This document shows positions 4,465-36,386 of a stretch of DNA of 64,000 nt, piece by piece. Position 1 is the stretch's first letter, and every line of letters starts with the position of its first letter. The notes beneath the pieces are model-generated. The model was given only the letters and a program-made list of their open reading frames with translations, was not told the origin of the DNA and searched no databases. The position numbers were made by a program, and so were the translations under genes. The stretch is from positions 372,001 through 436,000 of the IMG/VR virus record IMGVR_UViG_3300028654_000001. One strand, given 5' to 3'.

Positions 4465-4680
4465 TCAATCAGGGCAGCCAGCACAGCCCCTTCGAATAAC
4501 GTAGGAGAGTGATGGGCCACTATCAGGTATCAAGTTGAGTGTCCCATGAGAGAAGTTCGCCTTGATGATCTTAGCCCCTCTTCTATCAAGTATGGCCGTA
4601 CCCTCATTGATAGCCGTAAAGCACCGACCCATGTCCTCAGGAGACATGACATCATTACACTCGAAAGGAACCCCGAACAC
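4465..4680 (-). CDS. Small hypothetical protein (start uncertain)
   Basis: 71-aa ORF filling the gap on the coding strand. Confidence 0.35.
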   Translation of the reverse strand: MFGVPFECNDVMSPEDMGRCFTAINEGTAILDRRGAKIIKANFSHGTLNLIPDSGPSLSYVIRRGCAGCPD

Positions 4681-4842
4681 CTAGGTGGATACACCGAGGA
4701 AGGCTTTGATTCTCGCTTGAGTCTCAACAGGGGCCTTCTTCACCTCTGATTCCCATACCACTAAGCACTCAATTCCAATCTCTGCAAAGGCAACTACCAA
4801 CTCAGACTCATGCTCGAAGTTAGCCAGAAAACCGCCGCTAAC
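4681..4842 (-). pseudogene. Orphan C-terminal fragment of a Vsr/DUF559-like homing endonuclease
   Basis: Start-less frame translates to ...FEHESELVVAFAEIGIECLVVWESEVKKAPVETQARIKAFLGVST*, matching the LVxWExE C-terminal strand/helix of Vsr-like nucleases. Confidence 0.5.
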
Positions 4843-5470
4843 TCACCCCCAGGAATTTTGCCGGGGCGAGCACCCCTCTACCGACGTACGGGCCGAAACT
4901 AGACCGGATGCCCGACCCGTAGCGAGGTTGCTGCAAGCCTCGGATGATCTTCACAGTAGCCTTGGCTCTTTCAAGCTGGGCGGTGAATTGATCGATCAAG
5001 CTCTGTTTCATATCACTGTACTTAGCAGACTTCTCAAGATCCAAAGAAACACCTCCAATCGAGTAGCTATTGTGGGCCAAGATCCCATTCGCCAGTACGA
5101 AGTTCTCAGGACCGGGAACAGATAAATCATACATAAAAGGTCTAGAGAGCGCCTCTCTAACCCCAAGAATTAGCTCTTTACCTAGGAGGTCTCCTTGAAC
5201 CACAGCTATGGGTTCACGATCTTCAAACTTATTTGAGGGCTTTGCTACAGGGAGGAGACCCCTCATTGAAAACAAACTATGGTCTGTTGTAACAATAACC
5301 TGTCTTCCATCCAGTAAGGTAACTTGAACGCAATCTTTCTCACTAGAGGGATGCTTAAGGATTGCAGTAACCTTTGACTTAGTAACACGCCCAGTAGGGG
5401 TAACTGATCTAACCCGCAGTAGACCAGCCTGAAAAGCACTCTTGATTGCGGACCTAACTTCCGGTTTCAT
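4838..5470 (-). CDS. Split-intein C-precursor: IntC (~134 aa) plus 76-aa C-extein of a neck/adaptor protein
   Basis: Block B IVTTDHSLF; blocks F/G MYDLSVPGPENFVLANGILAHN|S; no block A. Likely start is ATG at 5470 after GAGGTG (ORF track starts at 5476). Confidence 0.9.
   Translation of the reverse strand: MKPEVRSAIKSAFQAGLLRVRSVTPTGRVTKSKVTAILKHPSSEKDCVQVTLLDGRQVIVTTDHSLFSMRGLLPVAKPSNKFEDREPIAVVQGDLLGKELILGVREALSRPFMYDLSVPGPENFVLANGILAHNSYSIGGVSLDLEKSAKYSDMKQSLIDQFTAQLERAKATVKIIRGLQQPRYGSGIRSSFGPYVGRGVLAPAKFLGVS
5069..5470 (-). mobile_element. C-terminal half of split intein (IntC)
   Basis: TxxH and terminal His-Asn (AAT at 5071-5069), followed by Ser+1. Confidence 0.9.
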
Positions 5471-6434
5471 AGACACCTCGCAAGGTCACAAGAAGGTCTC
5501 TGACCCTATCAACCCAAACAGAAAAGTCACCTGAATCATGCTCAGGAACCCTAAGAAGAGTCCAACCATGGTTCAGTAGATAGGTGGTCTTTCGTTTGTC
5601 CAACTTTGCAATATCAGGATTAGCTGTAAGACCGCAGATAGAACACCCATGCCAGTAACAACCATCAACCTCTATAGCCAGCTTTAGTTCAGAGAATGCT
5701 TCGTCAATATGGTAATAACCCACTCTGAACTCTCGTTGAAACCCATGAACACCAGCTTCAACTAAAGCCGCTTCAAACCTCTGATGGAGTTTAGAGAAAG
5801 TTCTCCTGATAAACCCACGAGCCTTAGCAGCAGATTCCCGTATCTCACCCCGGTGCTCTTTTTGATATAAGGCCTGCTTAGCTACAAAATCAGGATCTTT
5901 CCAGAGCTTAGCACTTCGCTCTCCTACTCTCATACGTGCCTCAGGGGTTTTATTATACTGAGTCAAATGAAGGGTAGCCCTTTCACGATAACCTGAGTCT
6001 TGCATCCGACGAGAAGCTTCAGCTATCTGATTCCGCGTCTTTTTCCCCTCAGGCGTTTGAAACCTAAGTTTAAGAGTTTCAGCTTGCGCTATCTTCTGAG
6101 CTTCAGTCTTCTTTTTTTTAGCACGAGTAACTGATGAAGTTAGAGCAGCATTTGGCCACTTTTCCTGGTATTGGCTGAGTGTCAAACCGGAACAGGACTT
6201 TAGATGCTTAGTAGAGATACTTGCTTGTTTTCCTCTACACTCAAGGCAAGTAACGAAGTGCTCACCTTCTATAAGATTACTTAGACTACTCTCTACAATT
6301 GCTGACCCGACAGAACCAGAGCTAACTAATACCCCAGCCGATACTAGGTTGATCAATGCACGTTGATTCATTCCAAACTGAGTAGTTACACTCAATCTTG
6401 ACCTACAACCGATTGGAACCCTAAAACCAGCCAT
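5454..6434 (-). CDS. Free-standing Vsr/DUF559-type homing endonuclease with N-terminal Zn finger and NUMOD-like helical region
   Basis: CLECRGKQASISTKHLKSCSGLTLSQY (Zn finger); FQREFRVGYYHIDEAF..LAIEVDGCYWHG..DKRKTTYLLNHGWTLLRVPEHD (DUF559/Vsr core). Confidence 0.85.
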   Translation of the reverse strand: MAGFRVPIGCRSRLSVTTQFGMNQRALINLVSAGVLVSSGSVGSAIVESSLSNLIEGEHFVTCLECRGKQASISTKHLKSCSGLTLSQYQEKWPNAALTSSVTRAKKKKTEAQKIAQAETLKLRFQTPEGKKTRNQIAEASRRMQDSGYRERATLHLTQYNKTPEARMRVGERSAKLWKDPDFVAKQALYQKEHRGEIRESAAKARGFIRRTFSKLHQRFEAALVEAGVHGFQREFRVGYYHIDEAFSELKLAIEVDGCYWHGCSICGLTANPDIAKLDKRKTTYLLNHGWTLLRVPEHDSGDFSVWVDRVRDLLVTLRGVYETGS

Positions 6435-8770: not shown

Positions 8771-9190
8771 TCAGACTTCGGCCATCACCAGCGCACCCAT
8801 TGCAAACGAAACCTGGTCACCAGCGTTAATAACTTTGGGGGTAACAAGGGGTCCTTGATAAAGCATGTTACCAGCCGCCACGAGGTCACAGATCCCAACC
8901 CAACCAATGGCTGTTGACCCATAACCTGCTGTAGAGACTTCCCAGGTGATCGCTATTGAGTTAGCTACTGAGTTCCCAACTCCGATAGTTGCCCAAGTGA
9001 TTGGTTGACGAACATAATCCGTAACCCCAGCTCCTGTAGGGACCTCACCAAGAAATGACCCTGATACAGTCGGGTCTGAAGTTAACAGAGCGGCAAAGAC
9101 TGTAGTTGGCCAAGAATAAGCAAGCTCAGAGTTGTGCTTGAGAGCTTGGTCTAAAACCCTGCCAGCAAGGAATGTAGTTTTTGCGGCCAT
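8771..9190 (-). CDS. Small phage tail-fibre/virion structural protein
   Basis: Y.RQ.ITW..VANS.AITW..GWVGICD..GNMLY.GPL..PK.INAGD..SF..GAL pattern is typical of a widespread small tail/virion protein family. Confidence 0.65.
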   Translation of the reverse strand: MAAKTTFLAGRVLDQALKHNSELAYSWPTTVFAALLTSDPTVSGSFLGEVPTGAGVTDYVRQPITWATIGVGNSVANSIAITWEVSTAGYGSTAIGWVGICDLVAAGNMLYQGPLVTPKVINAGDQVSFAMGALVMAEV

Positions 9191-9276
9191 CGTGGTGTCT
9201 CCTGTCCCTTCTTCGAGGTGGTCTTCAGTACTGACCCATCAAACCCCACCCCATCAATGGATTGTTAGAGTAGTGG

Positions 9277-9561
9277 TTAGGCTGCCTGAGACACCCCAGG
9301 GATCACTGGTTTGATGAACTTAGCCATCACAAACACCGGACGATCCTTCTTCCGAGAGTTGCAATACTTGCAACAGGAGATCACATTGTCCTGCGTATTA
9401 GAACCACCTAGCTTAATGGAAACCAGATGATCAAATGTCTCTTTCTGATTAGAGGCATACTGAGCTGTAGTCAGAGGCTTTCGACAAGCATTACACACAG
9501 GATAGAGACCATCAGGGCGACTGCTATCCTTGTGAAGGTCAGTTGTTTGGTTTTTGGCCAC
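9277..9561 (-). pseudogene. Internally deleted HNH endonuclease (mini-HNH)
   Basis: HKDSSRPDGLYPVCNAC joined almost directly to TFDHLVSIKLGGSNTQDNVISCCKYCNSRK; the first CxxC of the HNH core is missing. Confidence 0.6.
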
Positions 9562-9603
9562 ATTTGATGCAAGTCCTCAGGGCTGTCATACGAAAGCCCC
9601 TAA

Positions 9604-26323: not shown

Positions 26324-27025
26324 TTATCCCTCACGGGGCTCCAGAGGATTGCAAAATTCACACGATGCCTTTGGCTTCTTGTGCCACCTCAAGTGAGTAT
26401 AGTACCGACCATTTTTAGACAATTCTTCGGGGTCAACCTCTCTTGGACCCTTCAAAGTACTACCCCTAAGAATGTTCATTTCATCAAAAGTCAGAAATTC
26501 TTTGATGTCTAGATCAGAGTTTAGCAACCACTCAATGACCCGCCCCTTCAACTCACGACGTCTTTCAGACCGAAATCTCTCAGTTTTTAGAATTCGAATC
26601 AAGGAGTCGTAAATAACAGTAGGGAGTTCCTTCAACTTCTCATCCCATGCAGAAGATAAGGAATGACTGATCTCAACGCGGTTGCCTCTAGGTAGGGATC
26701 CTCCAAACTCCCAAAGCTGCACCTCTTCTAATGAGGAATATCCAAGTTCCACCCTACACTCATTAATGAATGACAACAACCTAGAGGACAGTTTGAAAAA
26801 CTCTCTGAGGTAGGTTATACGCTCACTTTCAAACCGAGAGTGAACCTGCTTTTCTGAAAATTTGGTCCAAGCAAGAAAGGCCACCCTCCTGTAGCTAGCT
26901 GACCGTATACTCGATACTCTCGAACTGATACAGTTACTTGTACCAATCTTGAGTACTTCTGGCTCAACCAAAACAAAGTAAGTCCCACCAAAGTTTGGGG
27001 CTGGAAGGTCTACTAAGTCATTCAT
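26324..27025 (-). CDS. T5orf172/MUG113-like GIY-YIG domain protein
   Basis: TYFV..VLKIGTS..SRVSSI..EKQVHSRF..REFF. Confidence 0.7.
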   Translation of the reverse strand: MNDLVDLPAPNFGGTYFVLVEPEVLKIGTSNCISSRVSSIRSASYRRVAFLAWTKFSEKQVHSRFESERITYLREFFKLSSRLLSFINECRVELGYSSLEEVQLWEFGGSLPRGNRVEISHSLSSAWDEKLKELPTVIYDSLIRILKTERFRSERRRELKGRVIEWLLNSDLDIKEFLTFDEMNILRGSTLKGPREVDPEELSKNGRYYTHLRWHKKPKASCEFCNPLEPREG

Positions 27026-27088: not shown

Positions 27089-27442
27089 TTAGTCCTTTGC
27101 GGCCTTCTTGGTCGCCTTCTTGGTGGCTGGCTTCTCTACAGGAACAATCACGCCTGTATCGACCTTGATCGCCTTCAGGAAACGAGCCTTGAGCTTCTTC
27201 GAAGCAGGCTTCGCCGGCACAGTCATGGTAGCACCGGTTGCTGGGTTACGAGCGGTACGGGCTGCTTTGGGGCCAACCTTAACCAACACGAACTTGACCA
27301 CACCCGGAATCACGAACTTCTGTTCTTTCTTCAGGGTCTTGCCGGCAACTGTGACTAGAGCACCCAAAAAGGCCCGCACGTGGGTCTTGGTGGTGTTTTC
27401 CATTTCGGCTGAGATGGCATTGATGAGCTGAGTTTTCGTCAT
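27089..27442 (-). CDS. hup: HU family histone-like DNA-binding protein
   Basis: MTKTQLINAIS...IPGVVKF..KAARTARNPATG..VPAKPASKKLKARFLK; Lys/Ala tail; start at ATG 27442 after AGGAAG. Confidence 0.9.
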   Translation of the reverse strand: MTKTQLINAISAEMENTTKTHVRAFLGALVTVAGKTLKKEQKFVIPGVVKFVLVKVGPKAARTARNPATGATMTVPAKPASKKLKARFLKAIKVDTGVIVPVEKPATKKATKKAAKD

Positions 27443-27555
27443 AACTAGGACTTCCTTCTGATTTGTTAGGATCTGAAGGCACACTCTACGTGGTGCCTTG
27501 AATTACCCAGATAGCTACTCGAGTTGACCAGGGTTTCTGATTCAAGAGGTGTAGG

Positions 27556-27993: not shown

Positions 27994-28109
27994 CGGAGAC
28001 TGGACTAACTTTCGGTGGATTCGACGTGGGAGCTAAAAAAGTTCCCTGAGGGTTCGGGGGCTTGCGACAAATCAGAGAAAAGACTGGTCAGATGGTCGGT
28101 GTTGGTGGA

Positions 28110-30416
28110 TCAGGTCTTCTTATAACAGCCGTTCAACGTCAGCCGTGTGGTCTTTGAAATAGTCTCAATCCCAAACTTATGACGAAGTTTCCTAATGGCT
28201 ACTTTAGATACGCTATAAAGTTTAGCGATCTGGTCATCACTATTGCGAAGGTATAGGTCTGAAAGAACATCCTTGGTCAACGAATCAAAAGAAAGGCTCC
28301 CAGAGGCCTTGGCACTTCTCTGGGTAAAGCTAATTGTTTGGATCCCCCACCGCTTTCGCTGCTGAGAGATCAAAACATCCGAAGTCCCGAATCTCTTACC
28401 GATCTCAGCATCAGTCATTAATTGGGCCTCGTACAACTCTCTCAAAGCGGCCTCAGTCAACCCAGATACCTTGGTATCACAGGTCTCTTTCTTATTGGGC
28501 TCTTTTGGTAGTTGGTAACAAGGAACCAAACACGTCCCCCCACCCTTCAGAAAGACTAAAATAGGTTCCATTCTATGATGACTACCGAAAGAGCCAAGCT
28601 TCATCTCAAGAGTACCCTCATACTCAAACCCGCACAGCTCGGCCATTCTAATTGACTCACTAACCAAAGGCAGTTGGGATCCATCAACTTGGATATCAGC
28701 CACATTAAGTAGCAGTCTTCCACCTGGGGCCAGACTGTTGAAGGACTTAGCTAGTAGTACAGAGAGAAATCTACTCAACCATAGATCCCAAGTTGGGTAA
28801 CGAACCCAACTCTGAGATGGATCATTGGAGTACCGCTCAACAGAAAAGTACGGAGGGCTAGTGAGAACCAAGTCAGCCTGAATATCACCTAGGTCTACCT
28901 CCTCAATTGGTTGATTGAAGAAAGTTAGGTTGACTCCTAGTAAATCCTGCAACTTTTGAAAAGACTCCCCAGCCTTCGGGTGAGGATCAACCCCAATATA
29001 TCGACGACCTGCTGCCAAAGCTCCGACAGCCCTACCCCCATATCCAGCACAGGGATCCAACACTAAACCACCAACTGAGGAGAAGTCCTCTACCAACCTC
29101 TTAGCAATAGCTGGTCTAAAGTTGGAAGGGGTTCGTACTATAGCTCGAAGTGCTCGAAATACATTCATTGGATACAGAGGGTCCCCAACTTTCAATTGGA
29201 AGTCTACAGCTCTTCGAATCAAGGCGGGGTCAAACCAAGCCCTAGTAAGAGATGGATTCTGTCCGTTGGTCGCTTCAAATCTATGTGGGAAGGCGGCCTG
29301 ACATACTGCTAACCCTACTCGACCACCCCCCTCAATCACCCCGTCACTTACTTTCGCCAAGGTTCTATGGCGTAGATTAGTGAAGTCCCTAACAACCTCA
29401 TCGTCAGAAGGCGGCTCTGGTAGCTTGAGTGAGGTTAGCAACTCAATCAAGGGTTCACCTTGCAACCCAGAATCTACGATACCTTTTGCTTCTTCCCAGG
29501 TAGGAATATACTTCGAGGTGTCTATTACAAAACCTGAACTTTTAACCGATCTTCGTACGGTATCGACCGAAGACCCTGTTGCCTGAGAAATCCACTCTAA
29601 GGATCGACCTTGCTCAACATAGTCACCAAGTTGATCCCTTAGTAAGTCAGCCGAAGATAGACCCCTAGCCCTGGGCACTAGTTCCAACTTATAGCCCATT
29701 GAAGGGGGGATATGAGGGGCTACCAAGTCCAAGAACCTGGTAAGGCTCTCACGATCGTGCAGCCATATATCAGCATCGTTAGTCTTGTAGAGTACAGGTA
29801 CGAGCCCAAACCGTTTCAGGAGTTCGAGTTGAACTTGTTGATCCTCGGGCCTTGGTGAAACAGAAAACCTAACATACCCGTTGGAGGTTTTTGAGCCATC
29901 ATCCAAGAACCAAATGGCCAAAGAGAAGGCATCAAACTCCGCAAGATCTATGTTGGAGAAGGACTTGTTCCCAGAACCATCAGGGTAGGCTTGCTTCCAA
30001 TAGGGGTATAAGTCCCTGGAACTATGCAGAGTCAGGCGAGATCCTGTATAGGTAACCCCATTCTTCACCGTCTTAGCTGGTTTGACTGAGCAAAGATGAT
30101 CGCCCCAAAGGGCGGCTTTCCAAGAGATGTAGTCATGCTGTTGGTCCGAGTGGTATTCACAGAGGCTTGCTGTGCAATCACTGCGAGAGGTGAGCCCAGC
30201 ATCTCCGAGTAGAGAGCCCAAGAGGAGAGTCTTCTGTAGTTGGGTCAGGGGCGGCAACTTCAAACGATCCGACTTTTGAATAGTCTGGATCTGGTACTTC
30301 ATTCTTCGTAGACTCACCTGCCTCTGACTCAACCCATACAACAAACCAATCTTGATCTCGGATAACCCATCATCCAGGTAAAGCCTGCGAAGTTCGGCTT
30401 CAGTGACGTCTGCCAT
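28110..30416 (-). CDS. LAGLIDADG endonuclease - amino DNA methyltransferase fusion with HTH repeats
   Basis: LLLGSLLGDAGL and LAIWFLDDG (LAGLIDADG); SNFRPAIAK, VLDPCAGYGG (motif I) and LTSPPYF (motif IV); HTH at the N-terminus and two at the C-terminus. Confidence 0.85.
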   Translation of the reverse strand: MADVTEAELRRLYLDDGLSEIKIGLLYGLSQRQVSLRRMKYQIQTIQKSDRLKLPPLTQLQKTLLLGSLLGDAGLTSRSDCTASLCEYHSDQQHDYISWKAALWGDHLCSVKPAKTVKNGVTYTGSRLTLHSSRDLYPYWKQAYPDGSGNKSFSNIDLAEFDAFSLAIWFLDDGSKTSNGYVRFSVSPRPEDQQVQLELLKRFGLVPVLYKTNDADIWLHDRESLTRFLDLVAPHIPPSMGYKLELVPRARGLSSADLLRDQLGDYVEQGRSLEWISQATGSSVDTVRRSVKSSGFVIDTSKYIPTWEEAKGIVDSGLQGEPLIELLTSLKLPEPPSDDEVVRDFTNLRHRTLAKVSDGVIEGGGRVGLAVCQAAFPHRFEATNGQNPSLTRAWFDPALIRRAVDFQLKVGDPLYPMNVFRALRAIVRTPSNFRPAIAKRLVEDFSSVGGLVLDPCAGYGGRAVGALAAGRRYIGVDPHPKAGESFQKLQDLLGVNLTFFNQPIEEVDLGDIQADLVLTSPPYFSVERYSNDPSQSWVRYPTWDLWLSRFLSVLLAKSFNSLAPGGRLLLNVADIQVDGSQLPLVSESIRMAELCGFEYEGTLEMKLGSFGSHHRMEPILVFLKGGGTCLVPCYQLPKEPNKKETCDTKVSGLTEAALRELYEAQLMTDAEIGKRFGTSDVLISQQRKRWGIQTISFTQRSAKASGSLSFDSLTKDVLSDLYLRNSDDQIAKLYSVSKVAIRKLRHKFGIETISKTTRLTLNGCYKKT

Positions 30417-30423
30417 ACCGAAG

Positions 30424-30432
30424 AGTATAGCA
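30424..30432 (-). promoter_or_regulatory. Extended -10 sigma70-type promoter (TGcTATACT), likely leaderless
   Basis: TATACT ends 7 nt before the ATG at 30416; no SD is visible. Confidence 0.5.
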
Positions 30433-30516
30433 TGGTGTGTTTAGGTTGCACTAGAAAAGATAACTTTGGTGGGTTCCCAGTATGACCGACGTGTCCAAAC
30501 TGGAAACTACCGGGTT

Positions 30517-31485
30517 TCAAGATGAGGGACGCCCCACAACTCGAGGGTGCTCGATGCCATGCTTCTTTAGGTGCCGATCAACTGTGGTTGCGGCTACCCC
30601 AGTTAACTTGGCCATCCTTCGAATCGGTACACCTTGAGCTGCCAACTCACGAAGGGATACCTCGGGGGCCTTCTCTCGAACTTGATAATGAGGACCCTGA
30701 AAGCCGAAGTTCAACTTGTAGTGCATGAATTCAGGCATGTGCGGCTTCACCAGAGCAATAAGTAGGTGAGCTTGGTCTTCACCTTCGAAGATGAATTGAC
30801 CGGTGTTTCCCTGGACAGGAACCCATCGAGGATTAAGACTGAACTTCCGAAAAATAGCTTGTGCAACCTCACGACTCTCTGACCCCATCCCGAAAGTGAT
30901 AACAGGCCACCAAGCGGCGGAGCCATCATCCATAAACCAAATTGCAAGTGCAAGAGCATCAACTAAGTCAACTACCTGCATTTGAAGTTGCTTGGGTCCA
31001 GGTTCCGGATAAAACAGATCATGCCATGGAAGCATAGTTGCATGAGATACAGTCTCACACCTGAAACCAGGAAACTCACTCCCTAGTGTCTTCCAAAGTA
31101 CTGGACGTAGCCCCAACTTAACCCAAGACCCCCACTCCTTGCTCTTCCACTCCAAGTACTCTTTTTGATCTTCACAATGGTTCTCTGAATACCTAGCAAC
31201 ATGGGTACTCTTTGAGATCCTACCGTCACCAAGCATCGAACCAACAAGAACAGATCGAAGACGTCCTTCAATAGGTACTAACTCATGGCGCTCAGTGCGA
31301 CAAATCGTCTCAATCCCCCAACGATGTCGCCAACTACGTATATGCTTAATAGGACACCCTACCTGAGCAGCAATTTCAGAGTCAGTAAGCTTAGACTCCA
31401 GATATTGGATTCTTAATTCGGCTTCGGATATTGGACAAGGTACGAGCTTCATACTAAACCGTATCACTAAGCTTTTAGGTGTCAA
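30517..31485 (-). CDS. LAGLIDADG homing endonuclease with N- and C-terminal HTH
   Basis: VLVGSMLGDGRI and LAIWFMDDG; paralogous to the N-half of 28110-30416. Confidence 0.85.
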   Translation of the reverse strand: MTPKSLVIRFSMKLVPCPISEAELRIQYLESKLTDSEIAAQVGCPIKHIRSWRHRWGIETICRTERHELVPIEGRLRSVLVGSMLGDGRISKSTHVARYSENHCEDQKEYLEWKSKEWGSWVKLGLRPVLWKTLGSEFPGFRCETVSHATMLPWHDLFYPEPGPKQLQMQVVDLVDALALAIWFMDDGSAAWWPVITFGMGSESREVAQAIFRKFSLNPRWVPVQGNTGQFIFEGEDQAHLLIALVKPHMPEFMHYKLNFGFQGPHYQVREKAPEVSLRELAAQGVPIRRMAKLTGVAATTVDRHLKKHGIEHPRVVGRPSS

Positions 31486-31507
31486 GGGTTAGGTTCAATA
31501 AAAGCAT

Positions 31508-31546
31508 TAAAGAGAAAGGCCGAGAGTCCTTTCGGAAACCCGGCCT
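31508..31546 (-). terminator. Rho-independent terminator after major capsid gene
   Basis: AGGCCGGGTTTCC-GAAA-GGACTCTCGGCCT followed by TTCTCTTT. Confidence 0.8.
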
Positions 31547-31570: not shown

Positions 31571-32440
31571 TTATACGCGAGTTACCAGCAACCTGGTGAG
31601 ACCGCGGGGGTTGAAGGCCCCAATGCCGACGTTTTCGAAGCAAGAAAATCCTATTGTCCTTGCTTTTGGATCGTCAGCCGACAGAACCGTGAGCTCTGTA
31701 CGTACGGGGAATCTTCCAAAGTTCTCAGGTTCCGCTGCGATGTACACAAAACCAGCAGGAACCAAACGGCTCGTGATGATCTGTGCACCCCACAGGTTCG
31801 CCTGAAGACCGGTCTTCAGAAGAACGGCTTGGCTCTCGATGTCGAGGATGTCCCTACCGAACTTACGGATATCCGCATAGTCGGTAGCATTCATGTAGAT
31901 ACGAGCTACACGAAGGTCATGACGCTCTACCTCAGCAAAGGCATCTGCTAGGACGCTTGGAGAGATCGGGGCCACAACGTTGATGTCGGGGTTGGTCTGA
32001 GGCAGGGTGTCGAAGCCCGAGACAGCAATGCTGTCGAGAACTGCGAACACACGCTCATCTTCAGCAGCCTGGATCTGGGCTTTCGCCAAGTCCTGGGCAC
32101 GTTCGATGAGGTCGAACCTACGCTCTTTGATCTGGGTGAGGGGGATCTCAGGGTTCGAGGCAATCTCGAAGAGCGGGAAGATGACCCTACGGGGCTTCTG
32201 GATCGCGAGGATGTTTTCACCCTCTTCGCCGACCACATAAGCCGTAACGTCTGGATCTTTATCATAAATTGGCAGGGCCCCGTCTGGGAGTTGCTCTACC
32301 AAAAATGTTTTCCGCCCGACGGCCGTGTAGTCACGACGCAGCCTGAGGGGCTGAATCATGGAGGCAGCGAGCTTCGCACGGCCAGCAGCCGTTTTGATAT
32401 ACTCACTGATGATCTGTTGCTTTACTTCGTTTGATACCAT
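31571..32440 (-). CDS. Major capsid protein (HK97 fold)
   Basis: 289 aa; order protease-scaffold-decoration-MCP; V.EEGE..FEIASNPEI..ERAQDLAKAQIQAAED..DIRKF..LWGAQII pattern; strong codon bias and terminator. Confidence 0.85.
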   Translation of the reverse strand: MVSNEVKQQIISEYIKTAAGRAKLAASMIQPLRLRRDYTAVGRKTFLVEQLPDGALPIYDKDPDVTAYVVGEEGENILAIQKPRRVIFPLFEIASNPEIPLTQIKERRFDLIERAQDLAKAQIQAAEDERVFAVLDSIAVSGFDTLPQTNPDINVVAPISPSVLADAFAEVERHDLRVARIYMNATDYADIRKFGRDILDIESQAVLLKTGLQANLWGAQIITSRLVPAGFVYIAAEPENFGRFPVRTELTVLSADDPKARTIGFSCFENVGIGAFNPRGLTRLLVTRV

Positions 32441-34715: not shown

Positions 34716-36386
34716 TCATTGGATACCGAGGGAGAACAGTTCACCTTTTTCGATTAGTTGAGCTCTCTCGGAAACTATTGGGGTTCGGCCCATTACCTCA
34801 CTACAAGCAGTGAGGTAATCATCTACATTTGGATATGATCTCGTTCCGCCTACTGCGATAACGGTCTTGTAAATTCGAGTGTCGCCTGCTAGGGAAGACT
34901 TTTTAGTCGCCCTCTCCAGAAGTCGGCACATAACAAGAATCTCACGACCACTAAATCTTTTTGCTTGAGCCACGGCTTGCCACCCACCTACATCGTGGAG
35001 GATCAGCCCAGCCAACACACTTTTTGCAGCTCTTTCGTCTTTAACGTTAGCTGCCACCATCTTAGCTCTGTCGATCCACTTAGAATACTTCAGAGCTGAT
35101 TTGATGAGAGATTCATTTGAATGGTTTGGATCTAAGGTGGACTCATCCTTATCTTTATTGGAGTCCGCCAAGTTCTTCTTGACCTTCTTGGTAACCTCAT
35201 CAACGATAGCCCCGTATAGGTCGTCGATGGTCTTCTTAAAGGGGTTCTCCTTCTCAGAAGGTGTGCTCGGAGCTGTGTCCTTAAACTCAGACTCACCAGG
35301 GAAGTCTTGTTGTGCAGCCACAGGACCCCCACCGTTAATCTCAGTGAGCCTCTGCTCTAAAGCCTGAGCAGCTCGGTCACTACCAGAGAAGGCGGCAGGA
35401 GTTTTTAAGTATCCCAGAGAGGGACCATCATAGAGGTATGCCAGGTGATCCCCTGGGGTGGCCTTGACGTTGATTGACCGACGAGGGGTATTGAGTCGTG
35501 CAGCCTTCTGCATCGCATTGACGTCGAAGACCTCAACAGGACGGGAGAAGGCTACCTGGATCTTCTGCCTGGCGTTCTCAACCATCAAGGCTGTCTTCGG
35601 GTCTAAGATCTTATTAAGGACAGCGCCGACGAAGGCTGGGTTGGCAACCCAGGAGCCCTCGATGAACTTCACCGACCCAGGCTCTACCTTAACGTGTCCG
35701 CAGAGCTCGGCAATCTTCCGACGCTTACCACTCGCGTCAATGAACCATTGACCCTTCTCGTACTTGATGTGCCTGCAGAGCTGAGTCTCATCCTCGGCTA
35801 CGTTACCGCACTTGGTGCAGACCGTGAACGAGACATGACACCCCATAGAGAGTGTGCTGAGGGTCCCGTCTAAGATAGCTGCTATGAGTTCTCGGTGCTT
35901 CCTGTCAGTGGCAATCAGGATGTCTACGTAAACTGAATCCCCAATATCTCGAGCTGCGGCATCAATGATCTTGCCCTTGGAGAGTTCTGGGATCTGAATG
36001 TGTTCAACGTAGTTCTCACCACCTATAAACGTCCTGAAAGACGAAAGAAGTAACTTTCTCTCCCAAGCATCATTGTTGTTATTAATGTACTTGGTGGTGC
36101 CGGCAGTAATATAGAAGTCTGGGAACTTACGGTCGATCTGGACACCATCGAACATCTGCTTGCCAGTGGGTAGCCCCACTGGAGTCTCTGTGTCGACTGA
36201 GGCAATGATGGTGCAGTGCGAAAGTAGGTACTGAGTCGGGTCATACTGTTGGAGTACAACCTGAGAGGCTTTCCTAATCTCAAATGTAGGTGATGGTAGA
36301 CACGCCTTAGCACGGATGTCTTCCCAGACGGCTTGGTTGATAGTCGCGTTGGTGACTCGAGCTTTTGCGTACTTTGGGAAACCCAT
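34716..36386 (-). CDS. Prohead (capsid maturation) protease with Cys-rich insert
   Basis: YVEH...GKIIDA...LSMGC..CTKCG..LCRH..FIEGSWVANPAF fits HK97/herpes-type Ser protease motifs; position between portal and MCP. Confidence 0.75.
   Translation of the reverse strand: MGFPKYAKARVTNATINQAVWEDIRAKACLPSPTFEIRKASQVVLQQYDPTQYLLSHCTIIASVDTETPVGLPTGKQMFDGVQIDRKFPDFYITAGTTKYINNNNDAWERKLLLSSFRTFIGGENYVEHIQIPELSKGKIIDAAARDIGDSVYVDILIATDRKHRELIAAILDGTLSTLSMGCHVSFTVCTKCGNVAEDETQLCRHIKYEKGQWFIDASGKRRKIAELCGHVKVEPGSVKFIEGSWVANPAFVGAVLNKILDPKTALMVENARQKIQVAFSRPVEVFDVNAMQKAARLNTPRRSINVKATPGDHLAYLYDGPSLGYLKTPAAFSGSDRAAQALEQRLTEINGGGPVAAQQDFPGESEFKDTAPSTPSEKENPFKKTIDDLYGAIVDEVTKKVKKNLADSNKDKDESTLDPNHSNESLIKSALKYSKWIDRAKMVAANVKDERAAKSVLAGLILHDVGGWQAVAQAKRFSGREILVMCRLLERATKKSSLAGDTRIYKTVIAVGGTRSYPNVDDYLTACSEVMGRTPIVSERAQLIEKGELFSLGIQ

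What the first reader, a model, noticed from the sequence alone, without database searches (positions are those of the whole stretch)
28110..30432. LAGLIDADG endonuclease fused to a DNA methyltransferase, apparently on a leaderless sigma70 transcript
A single ORF joins HTH, LAGLIDADG, an amino-MTase (DPCAGYGG then TSPPY; SPPY is typical of N4-cytosine enzymes) and two more HTH copies. It has its own extended -10 (TGcTATACT, 7 nt from ATG) within an otherwise late region. It could be a self-protecting selfish element (cut unmethylated competitor DNA, methylate self) or an anti-restriction MTase that captured a homing nuclease for mobility.
Basis: partly seen in the sequence, partly recalled or inferred. 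Interest (0 to 1): 0.6.

Follow-up and report, generated by a model that had tools for sequence, protein, structure and literature searches.

The report
Mobile homing-nuclease–methyltransferase fusion cassette in megaphage
A 2.4-kb mobile gene cassette next to the capsid gene of a 512-kb soil phage encodes one protein that joins an I-SceI-type DNA-cutting (homing) enzyme to a DNA methyltransferase; it belongs to a large, undescribed phage family and raises the testable idea of a 'homing restriction-modification' enzyme.

Summary
On the minus strand, 28110..30416 is one intact 768-aa ORF. Its parts in order are an HTH, an I-SceI-type double-motif LAGLIDADG nuclease, another HTH, a circularly permuted N4/N6 amino-methyltransferase and two more HTHs. 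TGcTATACT lies 7 nt before the ATG. Both catalytic centres are invariant in 50 family members, and dN/dS is about 0.11 in every domain. Contigs from three other samples show no frameshift.

The gene is a discrete cassette (28100..30516). It is absent from a near-identical relative, where 17 bp stand in its place. It sits in an insertion hotspot just downstream of a very conserved putative major capsid gene, in a widespread clade of soil and rhizosphere megaphages. In relatives that site is empty, or holds a stand-alone LAGLIDADG gene (also present here at 30517..31452), this fusion, or the same methyltransferase fused to a tandem PD-(D/E)xK nuclease-like module.

The fusion is old: its LAGLIDADG domains form one clade. 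It is essentially confined to phage contigs. A sigma70-like promoter abutting the start codon recurs in these cassettes (14 of 23, against 6 of 1085 control ORFs), but no RNA data exist.

It is most likely a free-standing homing-endonuclease cassette with a fused protective methyltransferase. Whether the methylation shields against host restriction or against its own nuclease is unresolved.

The parts
28100..30516 (-). F cassette: the whole mobile unit, made of the promoter region, the 768-aa fusion ORF and 10 nt of 3' tail
   Evidence: blastn against L011, a near-identical relative that lacks it: homology stops at 30517 and resumes at 28099, with 17 unrelated bp in between.
28110..30416 (-). 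ORF of the LAGLIDADG-methyltransferase fusion protein (768 aa plus stop; P0001)
   Evidence: AF2 model has mean pLDDT 90.5 and pTM 0.76. No indels in contigs of 3 other samples.
30424..30432 (-). Extended -10-like element TGcTATACT, 7 nt upstream of the ATG; no Shine-Dalgarno sequence
   Evidence: Unique in the window at this strength. The same element and spacing are conserved in the 88%-identical orthologue L005, and analogous TTGACA-N16-18-TAnnnT-N5-9-start arrangements occur in relatives. No SD motif.
30282..30404 (-). N-terminal HTH module (aa 5-45), of the kind associated with phage homing nucleases
   Evidence: Three helices in the AF2 model. PHROG matches to the HTH parts of 'HNH endonuclease' and 'DNA binding protein' families. 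Repeated in P0002 and P0003.
29667..30251 (-). I-SceI-type monomeric double-motif LAGLIDADG nuclease domain (aa 56-250)
   Evidence: Pfam LAGLIDADG_2. The family profile hits I-WcaI and I-SceI at E 4e-17 to 1e-16, with the LGD, DDG and YKL motifs aligned. Foldseek TM 0.74-0.75. G71, D72, W169, D172, D173 and K243 are invariant in 50 sequences.
29532..29654 (-). Middle HTH module (aa about 255-295), followed by a variable linker up to aa about 345
   Evidence: AF2 helices at 255-294. Aligns with the C-terminal HTH of the stand-alone paralogue P0002. The linker is the least conserved segment: 59% identity against 76-79% for the other domains versus L010.
28542..29381 (-). Amino-methyltransferase domain (aa 346-625), with motif X/I (FRP...DPCAGYGGR) placed before motif IV (TSPPY); a circular permutation of beta-class N4/N6 DNA methyltransferases
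   Evidence: Against PDB 2zie, query aa 430-483 matches chain 217-270 and query aa 480-577 matches chain 5-102. PF01555 is above its cut-off. Motif residues are invariant. PADLOC gives MTase_II.
28131..28463 (-). Two C-terminal HTH repeats (aa 652-762); absent from most family members, which are about 640 aa
   Evidence: They are 46% identical to the HTH pair that sits in front of the active LAGLIDADG unit in LR745208.
30483..31527 (-). S cassette: a neighbouring, independently mobile stand-alone HTH-LAGLIDADG-HTH homing endonuclease gene. The ORF is 30517..31452 (311 aa from its ATG). Its promoter-like element TTGACA-N16-TACGGT-N5-ATG lies at 31485..31450.
   Evidence: Absent from L005, which carries only the fusion: 1045 bp are replaced by 120 bp. 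Sequence. Pfam LAGLIDADG_2 at E 4e-18. It belongs to a separate LAGLIDADG clade.
31571..32440 (-). Putative major capsid protein gene, the conserved anchor of the insertion hotspot. A terminator-like hairpin follows at about 31511..31546.
   Evidence: 91-100% amino-acid identity in the 80 best of more than 590 matching IMG/VR stretches. Weak Phage_capsid Pfam hits on homologues. Hairpin.

Best explanation
Window 28100..30516 (minus strand) is a free-standing homing-endonuclease cassette of a soil/rhizosphere megaphage.

1. Transcription. The cassette is read from its own sigma70-type promoter, which abuts the start codon and so gives a leaderless or nearly leaderless mRNA.
2. Product. It makes one 768-aa protein.
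3. Nuclease part. The HTH-flanked I-SceI-type LAGLIDADG domain is the mobility engine. During co-infection it makes a double-strand break at a long specific site near the capsid-gene/downstream-gene junction of related genomes that lack the cassette. Recombinational repair then copies the cassette in.
4. Methyltransferase part. The permuted N4/N6 amino-methyltransferase is a permanently fused passenger that methylates phage DNA at its own short motif. I think it most likely protects progeny DNA from restriction in the host, which pays the phage for carrying the selfish nuclease. It may also, or instead, mask the nuclease's own target.

Shown here: the domain identities, conservation of both active sites, purifying selection, the cassette borders, the presence/absence polymorphism, the age of the fusion, and the recurrent promoter geometry.

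Inferred: cleavage, homing, methylation, the transcription start, and the biological role of the methylation.
For: Domains and folds.

Active sites: both LAGLIDADG acidic residues and the I-SceI K223-equivalent lysine are invariant, as are methyltransferase motifs I and IV, across 50 members at 25-91% identity.

Selection: dN/dS is 0.09-0.18 in every domain against the 88% orthologue.

Mobility:
- Three near-identical backbones differ only by cassette content. The window carries S+F, L005 carries F only and L011 carries S only, with sharp borders.
- Among loci carrying the same capsid gene, about half have no LAGLIDADG or methyltransferase gene downstream (several of them a gap of only 161-320 bp). 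About 20 have a stand-alone LAGLIDADG gene, about 9 have the fusion and 3 have a PD-(D/E)xK-methyltransferase.
- The order is S then F here but F then S in L038.

A long-lived fusion lineage confined to phage contigs.

Promoter:
- 14 of 23 non-redundant cassette genes have a sigma70-like promoter 4-10 nt before the start, against 6 of 1085 control ORFs.
- It is the only such case in the window.
- There is no SD, whereas neighbouring structural genes have one.

Methyltransferase autonomy: the same permuted methyltransferase, including the conserved region in front of motif X, exists as a stand-alone enzyme in at least hundreds of clusters and in Vibrio and Bacteroides phages. It therefore does not need the nuclease to find DNA. 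The phage encodes three other PF01555 methyltransferases, which fits a methylation-based anti-restriction strategy.
Against: - There is no biochemical or expression evidence of any kind, and no RNA run holds this DNA.
- Stand-alone LAGLIDADG genes succeed at the same site without a methyltransferase, so the benefit of the fusion is not explained by homing alone.
- The same methyltransferase clade is fused at least twice to a second, unrelated nuclease-like module. That hints at a functional nuclease-methyltransferase coupling rather than an arbitrary passenger.
- No sequence difference at the capsid-gene 3' end separated cassette-bearing from empty genomes, so the target site is unknown.
- Some relatives start with TTG or have the -10 further upstream, so not all can be strictly leaderless.
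Confidence: 0.55

Rival explanations
1. Single-chain 'homing restriction-modification' enzyme. The methyltransferase modifies a base inside, or overlapping, the LAGLIDADG recognition site, so carrier genomes are immune to their own nuclease without changing the conserved target sequence. Unmethylated cassette-free genomes that co-infect are cut and then converted. The fusion would exist because nuclease and methylase must act on the same site.
For: - The same methyltransferase clade, at the same genomic site, is fused either to a monomeric double-LAGLIDADG module or to a tandem PD-(D/E)xK module. The tandem module resembles NhoI, Eco15I-N, single-chain PvuII and I-Ssp6803I by fold. Both are pseudo-dimeric modules of a kind able to make double-strand breaks.
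- The fusion has been kept for a long time with both active sites invariant.
- The flanking capsid gene is extremely constrained, so immunity through target mutation would be costly.
- The AF2 pTM of 0.76 for the whole chain suggests a defined inter-domain arrangement.
Against: - Stand-alone LAGLIDADG genes occupy the same hotspot without any methyltransferase.
- The methyltransferase has many autonomous stand-alone relatives.
- Authors discussing another phage LAGLIDADG-methylase considered an R-M role unlikely, because LAGLIDADG enzymes have long sites and are not known in R-M systems (PMC9957025).
- No target site could be deduced.
Confidence: 0.3
2. The LAGLIDADG domain no longer cuts. It serves, with the HTH modules, as a sequence-specific DNA-binding platform (as in WhiA-type proteins) that delivers the methyltransferase to particular sites, for example for regulation or marking of phage DNA.
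For: - LAGLIDADG scaffolds combined with HTH domains are known as non-catalytic DNA binders (WhiA; from general knowledge).
- One relative (LR745208) carries an additional unit with N and R at the two catalytic positions.
- Four HTH modules imply extensive DNA binding.
Against: - In all 50 aligned members the unit next to the methyltransferase keeps both acidic residues and the lysine that aligns with I-SceI K223. WhiA-type proteins have lost these.
- The gene shows the presence/absence pattern of a mobile nuclease gene.
- The methyltransferase has autonomous relatives.
Confidence: 0.08
3. The cassette is not mobile at all. It is an ancestral accessory gene of this phage clade that has simply been deleted many times, and the nuclease has another role, such as degrading host or competitor DNA.
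For: - The fusion is found at the same position even in a relative whose capsid protein is only 57% identical.
- The cassette GC (0.478) equals the genome's (0.487).
- Fusion LAGLIDADG and methyltransferase trees are broadly similar.
Against: - The cassette borders are sharp and include its own promoter.
- Unrelated short filler sequences occupy the site in relatives.
- Neighbour order varies, S-F against F-S.
- The capsid gene is 94% identical where the fusion is only 44% identical. That mismatch suggests exchange or very fast evolution rather than simple co-descent.
- I-SceI-type enzymes are rare cutters and are poorly suited to bulk DNA degradation (general knowledge).
Confidence: 0.07

Closest known systems
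I-SceI and I-WcaI (monomeric, two-motif LAGLIDADG homing endonucleases of yeast mitochondrial group I introns; PDB 1r7m, 5a0m, 6x1j)
   Same: Same fold (Foldseek TM 0.74-0.75 over about 225 columns). The family profile matches at E about 1e-16. The LGD, DDG and YKL motifs align with those of I-SceI.
   Different: This gene is not intron-encoded. It is free-standing in a phage, flanked by HTH modules, and covalently joined to a methyltransferase.
Free-standing homing endonuclease genes of T4-like phages (seg and mob genes; general knowledge)
   Same: An intergenic cassette with its own expression signals, sporadic presence between conserved genes in close relatives, and location beside a highly conserved essential gene.
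   Different: Those genes encode GIY-YIG or HNH enzymes without a fused modification enzyme. Here the nuclease is a LAGLIDADG type and it carries a methyltransferase. Homing has not been demonstrated.
Cluster F actinophage methylases with an in-frame LAGLIDADG domain (Taj_79 and eight others; Genes 2023, PMC9957025)
   Same: A phage DNA methylase and a LAGLIDADG endonuclease domain in one polypeptide. The authors raise the same two readings, a selfish element or a single-peptide R-M.
   Different: In those proteins a roughly 139-aa LAGLIDADG domain is inserted inside the methylase, in nine closely related phages, and no evidence of transfer was found. Here a roughly 195-aa I-SceI-type domain sits at the N-terminus of a permuted methyltransferase, in at least 55 clusters, as a demonstrable indel cassette. 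tblastn found no mycobacteriophage match at E<=1e-5, so the two are not close relatives.
Type IIG/IIC single-chain restriction-modification enzymes such as MmeI (PMC2582602, listed)
   Same: An N-terminal nuclease followed by an amino-methyltransferase in one chain, with motif I placed before motif IV.
   Different: Type IIG nucleases are PD-(D/E)xK domains that cut at a fixed distance from a short site read by the methylase's recognition domain, and the genes are cellular defence genes. Here the nuclease is a LAGLIDADG with its own long-site DNA-binding saddle, and the gene lies on phage contigs.
TTHA0409 of Thermus thermophilus (PDB 2zie) and other beta-class N4/N6 DNA methyltransferases (Pfam PF01555)
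   Same: Best sequence match for both halves of the catalytic domain. Same FxP...DPxxGxG and TSPPY motifs.
   Different: The order of the two halves is swapped (circular permutation). The base methylated and the recognition motif are unknown.

Membership tests
LAGLIDADG homing endonuclease, monomeric two-motif (I-SceI) type | Two LAGLIDADG helices, each carrying the metal-binding acidic residue | tested here: met
   LLGD(72)AG and FLDD(173)GS. G71, D72, D172 and D173 are invariant in 50 sequences and align with the I-SceI motifs.
LAGLIDADG homing endonuclease, monomeric two-motif (I-SceI) type | The alpha-beta-beta-alpha-beta-beta-alpha pseudo-dimeric fold | tested here: met
   AF2 model (pLDDT over 90 in this region). 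Foldseek top hits are I-SceI and I-WcaI, TM 0.74-0.75. Pfam PF03161 scores 52 bits against a cut-off of 25.
LAGLIDADG homing endonuclease, monomeric two-motif (I-SceI) type | Site-specific double-strand cleavage of a long (about 18-22 bp) target | not testable with these tools
   Needs purified protein and candidate target DNA.
Free-standing homing endonuclease gene (mobile cassette) | Sporadic presence/absence at one locus among close relatives, with sharp borders | tested here: met
   Window carries S+F, L005 carries F only, L011 carries S only. Flanks are 87-94% identical, and 17-bp or 120-bp fillers occupy the site. Survey of 80 loci.
Free-standing homing endonuclease gene (mobile cassette) | Not embedded in an intron or intein | tested here: met
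   It is intergenic, between the S gene or capsid gene and the 145-aa gene. No Hint or intein Pfam match.
Free-standing homing endonuclease gene (mobile cassette) | Cleavage of the cassette-less allele and copying of the gene by repair (homing) | not testable with these tools
   The phage is uncultured. A plasmid-based assay would be needed.
Beta-class N4/N6 DNA amino-methyltransferase (Pfam N6_N4_Mtase, PF01555) | AdoMet-binding motif I (DPxxGxG) and catalytic motif IV ((S/D/N)PPY) | tested here: met
   DPCAGYGGR at 454-462 and TSPPY at 519-523, invariant in the family. PF01555 scores 38.6 bits against a cut-off of 26.7.
Beta-class N4/N6 DNA amino-methyltransferase (Pfam N6_N4_Mtase, PF01555) | Linear order: motif IV half first, motif X/I half last | tested here: not met
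   The order is reversed. Query 430-483 matches 2zie 217-270, and query 480-577 matches 2zie 5-102. It is therefore a permuted derivative and not a beta-class member by topology.
Beta-class N4/N6 DNA amino-methyltransferase (Pfam N6_N4_Mtase, PF01555) | Methylation of DNA at N4-C or N6-A in a defined motif | not testable with these tools
   No long-read methylation data are available here. SPPY alone does not decide the base.
Type IIG/IIC single-chain restriction-modification enzyme | Nuclease and methyltransferase in one polypeptide | tested here: met
Type IIG/IIC single-chain restriction-modification enzyme | Nuclease of a fold known from restriction enzymes (PD-(D/E)xK, HNH, GIY-YIG, PLD, half-pipe) | tested here: not met
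   The nuclease is a LAGLIDADG domain. Sister proteins at the same locus (P0055-P0060, L041, L045, L047) do have a tandem PD-(D/E)xK-like module.
Type IIG/IIC single-chain restriction-modification enzyme | Methylation by the same protein blocks its own cleavage | not testable with these tools
   This is the decisive experiment; see next steps.
Leaderless sigma70-dependent transcript | A -10 element 5-9 nt upstream of the start codon, and no Shine-Dalgarno sequence | tested here: met
   TGcTATACT-N7-ATG. Unique in the window. Recurrent in homologous cassettes, 14 of 23 against 6 of 1085 controls. No SD.
Leaderless sigma70-dependent transcript | Mapped 5' end at the A of the ATG | not testable with these tools
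   No RNA run holds this DNA. Only assembled contigs of DNA runs were available.
WhiA-like non-catalytic LAGLIDADG DNA-binding proteins | Loss of the catalytic acidic residues | tested here: not met
   Both are retained and invariant. Only the extra N-terminal unit of LR745208 has lost them.

The most novel reading that the evidence does not exclude
The protein would be the first LAGLIDADG-based restriction-modification enzyme, a single-chain 'homing R-M'. Its methyltransferase would immunise the carrier phage's own copy of a long, conserved target beside the capsid gene. Its nuclease would cut the unmethylated copy in co-infecting rival phages and so drive the cassette into them. The parallel tandem-PD-(D/E)xK-methyltransferase proteins at the same site would then be a second, convergent solution to the same problem.
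Probability: 0.3. Interest if true: 0.85.

Novelty: new variant of a known kind. Interest (0 to 1): 0.62.

Why it matters
Homing endonucleases and restriction-modification systems are the two classic kinds of selfish nuclease element, and they are usually treated as separate. LAGLIDADG enzymes have not been described in R-M systems (stated in PMC9957025).

This finding gives a large natural family of at least 55 sequence clusters, on phage genomes of 300-550 kb from soils worldwide, in which an apparently active I-SceI-type nuclease is permanently welded to an apparently active DNA methyltransferase. A sister lineage has the nuclease replaced by a restriction-enzyme-like fold. The question of whether a homing nuclease can use methylation for self-immunity therefore becomes directly testable with one recombinant protein.

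The family also offers:
- new rare-cutting nuclease scaffolds that come with built-in DNA-binding modules;
- a compact set of natural promoter-at-ATG cassettes;
- a well-defined hotspot for studying how selfish genes and useful passenger genes spread among uncultured megaphages.

Tried and rejected
1. MTase-only alleles in near relatives. The shorter database proteins at 43-82% identity turned out not to be real methyltransferase-only genes.
- P0010, P0011 and P0016 are gene calls that start at an internal ATG.
- P0074 is likewise a partial call. The full fusion is in frame in L097 and probably starts at a TTG.
- P0065 (L096) is a split form whose upstream partner is a truncated PD-(D/E)xK-type module.
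- True stand-alone relatives exist only at about 30-40% identity.

2. Target-site immunity. I compared the last 93 nt of the capsid gene plus 45 nt downstream across empty, S, F and PD-(D/E)xK-MTase loci. No substitution tracked cassette content. This is inconclusive.

3. Expression. No RNA run holds the stretch, and the runs available are assembled contigs only, so neither a transcript start nor expression could be examined.

4. Nucleotide search of deposited phage genomes found nothing. The protein search found only one full-length relative, LR745208.

5. Host. No CRISPR or tRNA work was done. One distant relative lies in a Paludibacteraceae MAG bin, which I do not regard as evidence for the host.

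7. Intein or intron origin was rejected: no Hint domain, and the position is intergenic.

8. An RNA methyltransferase was considered, because Foldseek ranks Trm11 and PrmA for the methylase part. I rejected it as the primary reading. Sequence similarity to DNA N4/N6 methylases covers both halves, and Foldseek cannot align permuted topologies.

9. The large representative-protein search and the complex prediction were not used, because nothing in the argument needed them.
Full report
WHAT IS THERE

The window is part of a 512,571-bp virus record with direct terminal repeats (window = bases 372001-436000). On the minus strand, 28110..30416 is a single ORF of 768 aa that starts with ATG.

Pfam finds LAGLIDADG_2 at aa 64-219 (52 bits, cut-off 25) and N6_N4_Mtase in two stretches (38.6 bits, cut-off 26.7), plus a weak HTH_23.

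Directly upstream, read on the coding strand, lies TG-c-TATACT (30432..30424), then 7 nt, then the ATG. There is no Shine-Dalgarno motif, whereas the capsid gene and several neighbouring genes have one.

An AlphaFold model built on 50 homologues is confident (mean pLDDT 90.5, pTM 0.76). It shows this order of parts:
- HTH (aa 5-45)
- LAGLIDADG domain (aa 56-250)
- HTH (aa 255-295)
- linker
- Rossmann-fold methyltransferase (aa 346-625)
- two HTH repeats (aa 652-762)

IS THE ORF REAL?

- Contigs from three further rhizosphere samples cover the ORF piecewise, including the LAGLIDADG-to-methylase junction and the promoter. They show 0-1 substitutions and no indels.
- Orthologues at 91, 88, 78-72 and 54% identity keep the same uninterrupted frame.
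- Against the 88% orthologue, dN/dS is 0.11 for the LAGLIDADG domain and 0.115 for the methyltransferase, and 0.09-0.18 for the other segments.

THE NUCLEASE DOMAIN

- A profile of the family hits I-WcaI and I-SceI in the PDB at E 4e-17 to 1e-16. The family's LGD, DDG and YKL motifs align to the corresponding I-SceI motifs.
- Foldseek ranks I-SceI and I-WcaI first, with TM 0.74-0.75.
- From general knowledge, I-SceI D44 and D145 bind the catalytic metals, and K122 and K223 are the lysines mutated to make nickases.
- Their counterparts here are D72, D173 and K243, which are invariant, and K151, which is conserved in at least 90% of 50 family members sharing as little as 25% identity.

This is the signature of an enzyme that still cuts, and not of a WhiA-like degenerate scaffold.

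THE METHYLTRANSFERASE DOMAIN

The best sequence match is the beta-class enzyme TTHA0409 (PDB 2zie). The two halves are in swapped order. The motif X/I half (FRP...DPCAGYGGR) comes first and matches the C-terminal part of 2zie. The motif IV half (TSPPY) follows and matches its N-terminal part. The domain is thus a circular permutation of the PF01555 type.

Motifs I and IV and a dozen further residues are invariant. PADLOC's Type II methyltransferase models also match.

The same permuted domain, including the conserved roughly 90 residues in front of motif X, occurs as a stand-alone protein of 300-440 aa in many hundreds of clusters. It is sometimes found with an HTH or a ParB domain, and it occurs in Vibrio and Bacteroides phages. 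It is therefore an autonomous DNA methylase module. Whether it makes 4mC or 6mA cannot be told from SPPY alone.

THE GENE IS A CASSETTE IN A HOTSPOT

The 289-aa gene at 31571..32440 is a putative major capsid protein. Its homologues have weak Phage_capsid hits. It is extraordinarily conserved: more than 590 IMG/VR stretches match, and the 80 best are 91-100% identical at the protein level. They lie on contigs of up to 529 kb.

I built domain HMMs from the family alignment and scanned what lies downstream of this gene in those 80 loci plus four others. Counts are approximate because some loci are near-duplicates.
- About half have neither a LAGLIDADG nor a methyltransferase gene there. In several, the next conserved gene follows after only 161-320 bp.
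- About 20 have a stand-alone HTH-LAGLIDADG-HTH gene of 310-327 aa.
- About 9 (plus L001, L005, L007 and L009) have the LAGLIDADG-methyltransferase fusion.
- Three have the methyltransferase with a different N-terminus.
- Others hold unrelated small genes, including a lysozyme, a superoxide dismutase and a lectin-like protein.

Three near-identical backbones make the point sharply.
- The window carries both a stand-alone gene (S, ORF 30517..31452) and the fusion (F).
- L005 carries only F.
- L011 carries only S.

By blastn, F corresponds to window 28100..30516 (2417 bp) and is replaced by 17 unrelated bp in L011. S corresponds to 30483..31527 (1045 bp) and is replaced by 120 bp in L005. The flanks are 87-94% identical. 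In L038 the order is F then S. This is the population pattern expected of free-standing homing endonuclease genes.

THE FUSION IS OLD AND PHAGE-SPECIFIC

A word-based search found 61 proteins. More than 50 of them combine PF03161 and PF01555, at 26-91% identity, on contigs of up to 549 kb.

In a tree of 80 LAGLIDADG domains, the fusion-type domains form one clade (support 99). It is separate from the stand-alone clade (support 99). The three 'stand-alone' rows that fall inside the fusion clade are ORFs cut by contig ends. A second, deep fusion clade contains LR745208, L067, P0062 and P0063.

In LR745208 (485 kb) the equivalent gene is a 1229-aa protein. An extra LAGLIDADG unit with N and R at the catalytic positions precedes an HTH pair, an intact unit, the methyltransferase and a zinc-ribbon tail. 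P0001 aligns colinearly with its residues 342-911.

In 185,579 prokaryotic species genomes only one locus matches over the full length. It too lies just downstream of a capsid homologue (57% identical), on an 85-kb contig of a MAG, and is presumably a binned phage contig. All other hits are LAGLIDADG-only.

The capsid protein of L009 is 94% identical to the window's, while the adjacent fusion is only 44% identical. The cassette therefore either evolves much faster than its anchor or is exchanged among lineages.

A SECOND NUCLEASE-LIKE PARTNER

Proteins P0055-P0060, P0064 and the genes in L041, L045 and L047 carry the same methyltransferase. In the methyltransferase tree they are nested among, or sister to, the LAGLIDADG-fused ones, in at least two places.

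In front of the methyltransferase they have zinc ribbons and two repeats with E...D...(D/N)VK motifs. An AlphaFold model of this part has pLDDT 78. Its best structural matches are the restriction enzymes NhoI, the Eco15I N-domain and single-chain PvuII (over both repeats), the PD-(D/E)xK homing endonuclease I-Ssp6803I, and DpnI.

The methyltransferase is therefore the constant part, and its N-terminal nuclease-like module has been swapped.

THE PROMOTER

In the window, P0001 is the only ORF of 100 aa or more with a strong sigma70-type match ending 4-9 nt before a start codon. The stand-alone gene next door has TTGACA-N16-TACGGT-N5-ATG. The TTG that a mechanical ORF list takes as its start is in fact the -35 hexamer.

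Across 23 non-redundant LAGLIDADG or methyltransferase genes at this site, 14 reach a score of 8 or more for such an arrangement. Only 6 of 1085 control ORFs from the same loci do. Typical examples are TTGACA-N16/17-TAC(G/A)(G/A)T-N5/6-ATG.

The capsid gene ends with a terminator-like hairpin. The cassettes thus bring their own promoter, placed so that transcription should start at or next to the start codon. This is comparative support, not proof. Some relatives use TTG starts or have the -10 further upstream, and no RNA data exist.

HOW IT MOST LIKELY WORKS

The shown facts fit a free-standing homing endonuclease cassette.

I infer that the LAGLIDADG domain, helped by its HTH modules, cuts cassette-free relatives near this junction during co-infection, and that repair copies the cassette.

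For the methyltransferase, two roles remain open.
- I give about 0.45 to a beneficial passenger that adds one more anti-restriction methylation specificity. The phage already has three canonical PF01555 methylases. The domain is autonomous elsewhere. Stand-alone nucleases manage at this site without it.
- I give about 0.3 to self-immunity, a homing R-M. This is favoured by the repeated fusion of this one methylase to two unrelated nuclease modules and by the extreme constraint on the neighbouring capsid gene.

Fusion rather than a two-gene operon may also be favoured because a leaderless transcript offers no ribosome-binding site for a second ORF. That is my own inference.

A pure DNA-targeting role for the LAGLIDADG domain, or a non-mobile ancestral gene, seems unlikely, for the reasons listed under the rival explanations.

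COMPARISON WITH WHAT IS KNOWN

The nearest precedent I found is a set of nine cluster F actinophage methylases with an in-frame 139-aa LAGLIDADG domain. Their authors discuss the same two readings and note that LAGLIDADG enzymes are not known from R-M systems (PMC9957025).

That family is unrelated at the level of my searches. It has a different architecture and showed no evidence of transfer.

Five literature searches gave no description of the present family, of its capsid-side hotspot, or of the PD-(D/E)xK sister fusions. I therefore rate it a new variant of a known kind.

LIMITS

Everything about activity, target, methylation motif, transcript start and host is inference. The phage is uncultured and is known from rhizosphere and soil metagenomes. 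The trees used the quick IQ-TREE mode with SH-aLRT support only.

Noticed in passing
window 30483-31527 (minus strand; ORF 30517-31452): A second, independent mobile cassette: a stand-alone HTH-LAGLIDADG-HTH homing endonuclease gene with TTGACA-N16-TACGGT-N5-ATG. The TTG start at 31485 given by a mechanical ORF list is really the -35 hexamer. The cassette is absent from L005 and is the commonest occupant of this site in relatives.
   Followed up: yes
window 26324-27025 (minus strand): A T5orf172/MUG113 (GIY-YIG-like) gene sits between the HU-like gene and the 430-aa gene. L005, L010 and L011 have no room for it there (HU to p430 gap of about 70-200 bp), so it is probably a third mobile nuclease cassette. 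Relatives carry a GIY-YIG gene (L006 11425-12165) or another LAGLIDADG-like gene (L005 5338-5838, minus strand) just past the 430-aa gene.
   Followed up: partly
L041:7041-9629, L045:2368-4650, L047:6983-9271; proteins P0055-P0060, P0064: At the same capsid-downstream site, the same methyltransferase is fused to zinc ribbons plus a tandem PD-(D/E)xK nuclease-like module. By fold it resembles NhoI, Eco15I-N, single-chain PvuII and I-Ssp6803I. No Pfam family covers this module.
   Followed up: partly
window 31571-32440 and loci L010-L089: The putative major capsid protein is 91-100% identical across the 80 best of more than 590 matching IMG/VR stretches, on contigs up to 529 kb. Its immediate neighbours drop to 30-60% identity. 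That is unusually strong conservation for a phage structural protein.
   Followed up: partly
L001:3140-6829 (LR745208.1, 485-kb uncultured phage): A 1229-aa version of the gene. A degenerate LAGLIDADG unit (N and R at the catalytic positions) is fused in front of an HTH pair, an intact LAGLIDADG unit, the methyltransferase and a long Cys-rich zinc-ribbon tail. It looks like an S-type and an F-type gene merged into one frame.
   Followed up: partly
L009:1746-4544; also the first genes of L096, L097 and L098: The homologue of the window's 556-aa gene (34716-36386) carries an intein with a LAGLIDADG_3 nuclease in several relatives (932 aa or more). The window's copy is intein-free. This is a further selfish element in the same structural-gene block.
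   Followed up: no
G000 C1:16718-17482, 482124-483347, 4566-5702 (outside the window): The phage genome encodes three further canonical (non-permuted) PF01555 DNA methyltransferases.
   Followed up: no
L012:6995-8929 and 8956-9597; L053:6883-7674; L037:6939-7562: Other occupants of the hotspot are a 644-aa protein with HTH repeats and zinc ribbons but no LAGLIDADG or methylase match, followed by an Fe/Mn superoxide dismutase; a phage lysozyme with a peptidoglycan-binding domain; and a concanavalin-A-like lectin/glucanase-fold protein.
   Followed up: no
L096:4974-6912 and L097:5083-6999: Database 'methyltransferase-only' proteins P0065 and P0074 are not real MTase-only alleles. L097 has the whole fusion in frame but no ATG at its N-terminus (probably a TTG start). 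In L096 the PD-(D/E)xK-type partner is truncated and shifted out of frame, which is either decay of the nuclease part or an assembly error.
   Followed up: partly
window 27089-27484 (minus strand): An HU/IHF-like histone-like DNA-binding protein gene lies among the capsid-region genes and is conserved in relatives (66-98% identity in the closer ones).
   Followed up: no
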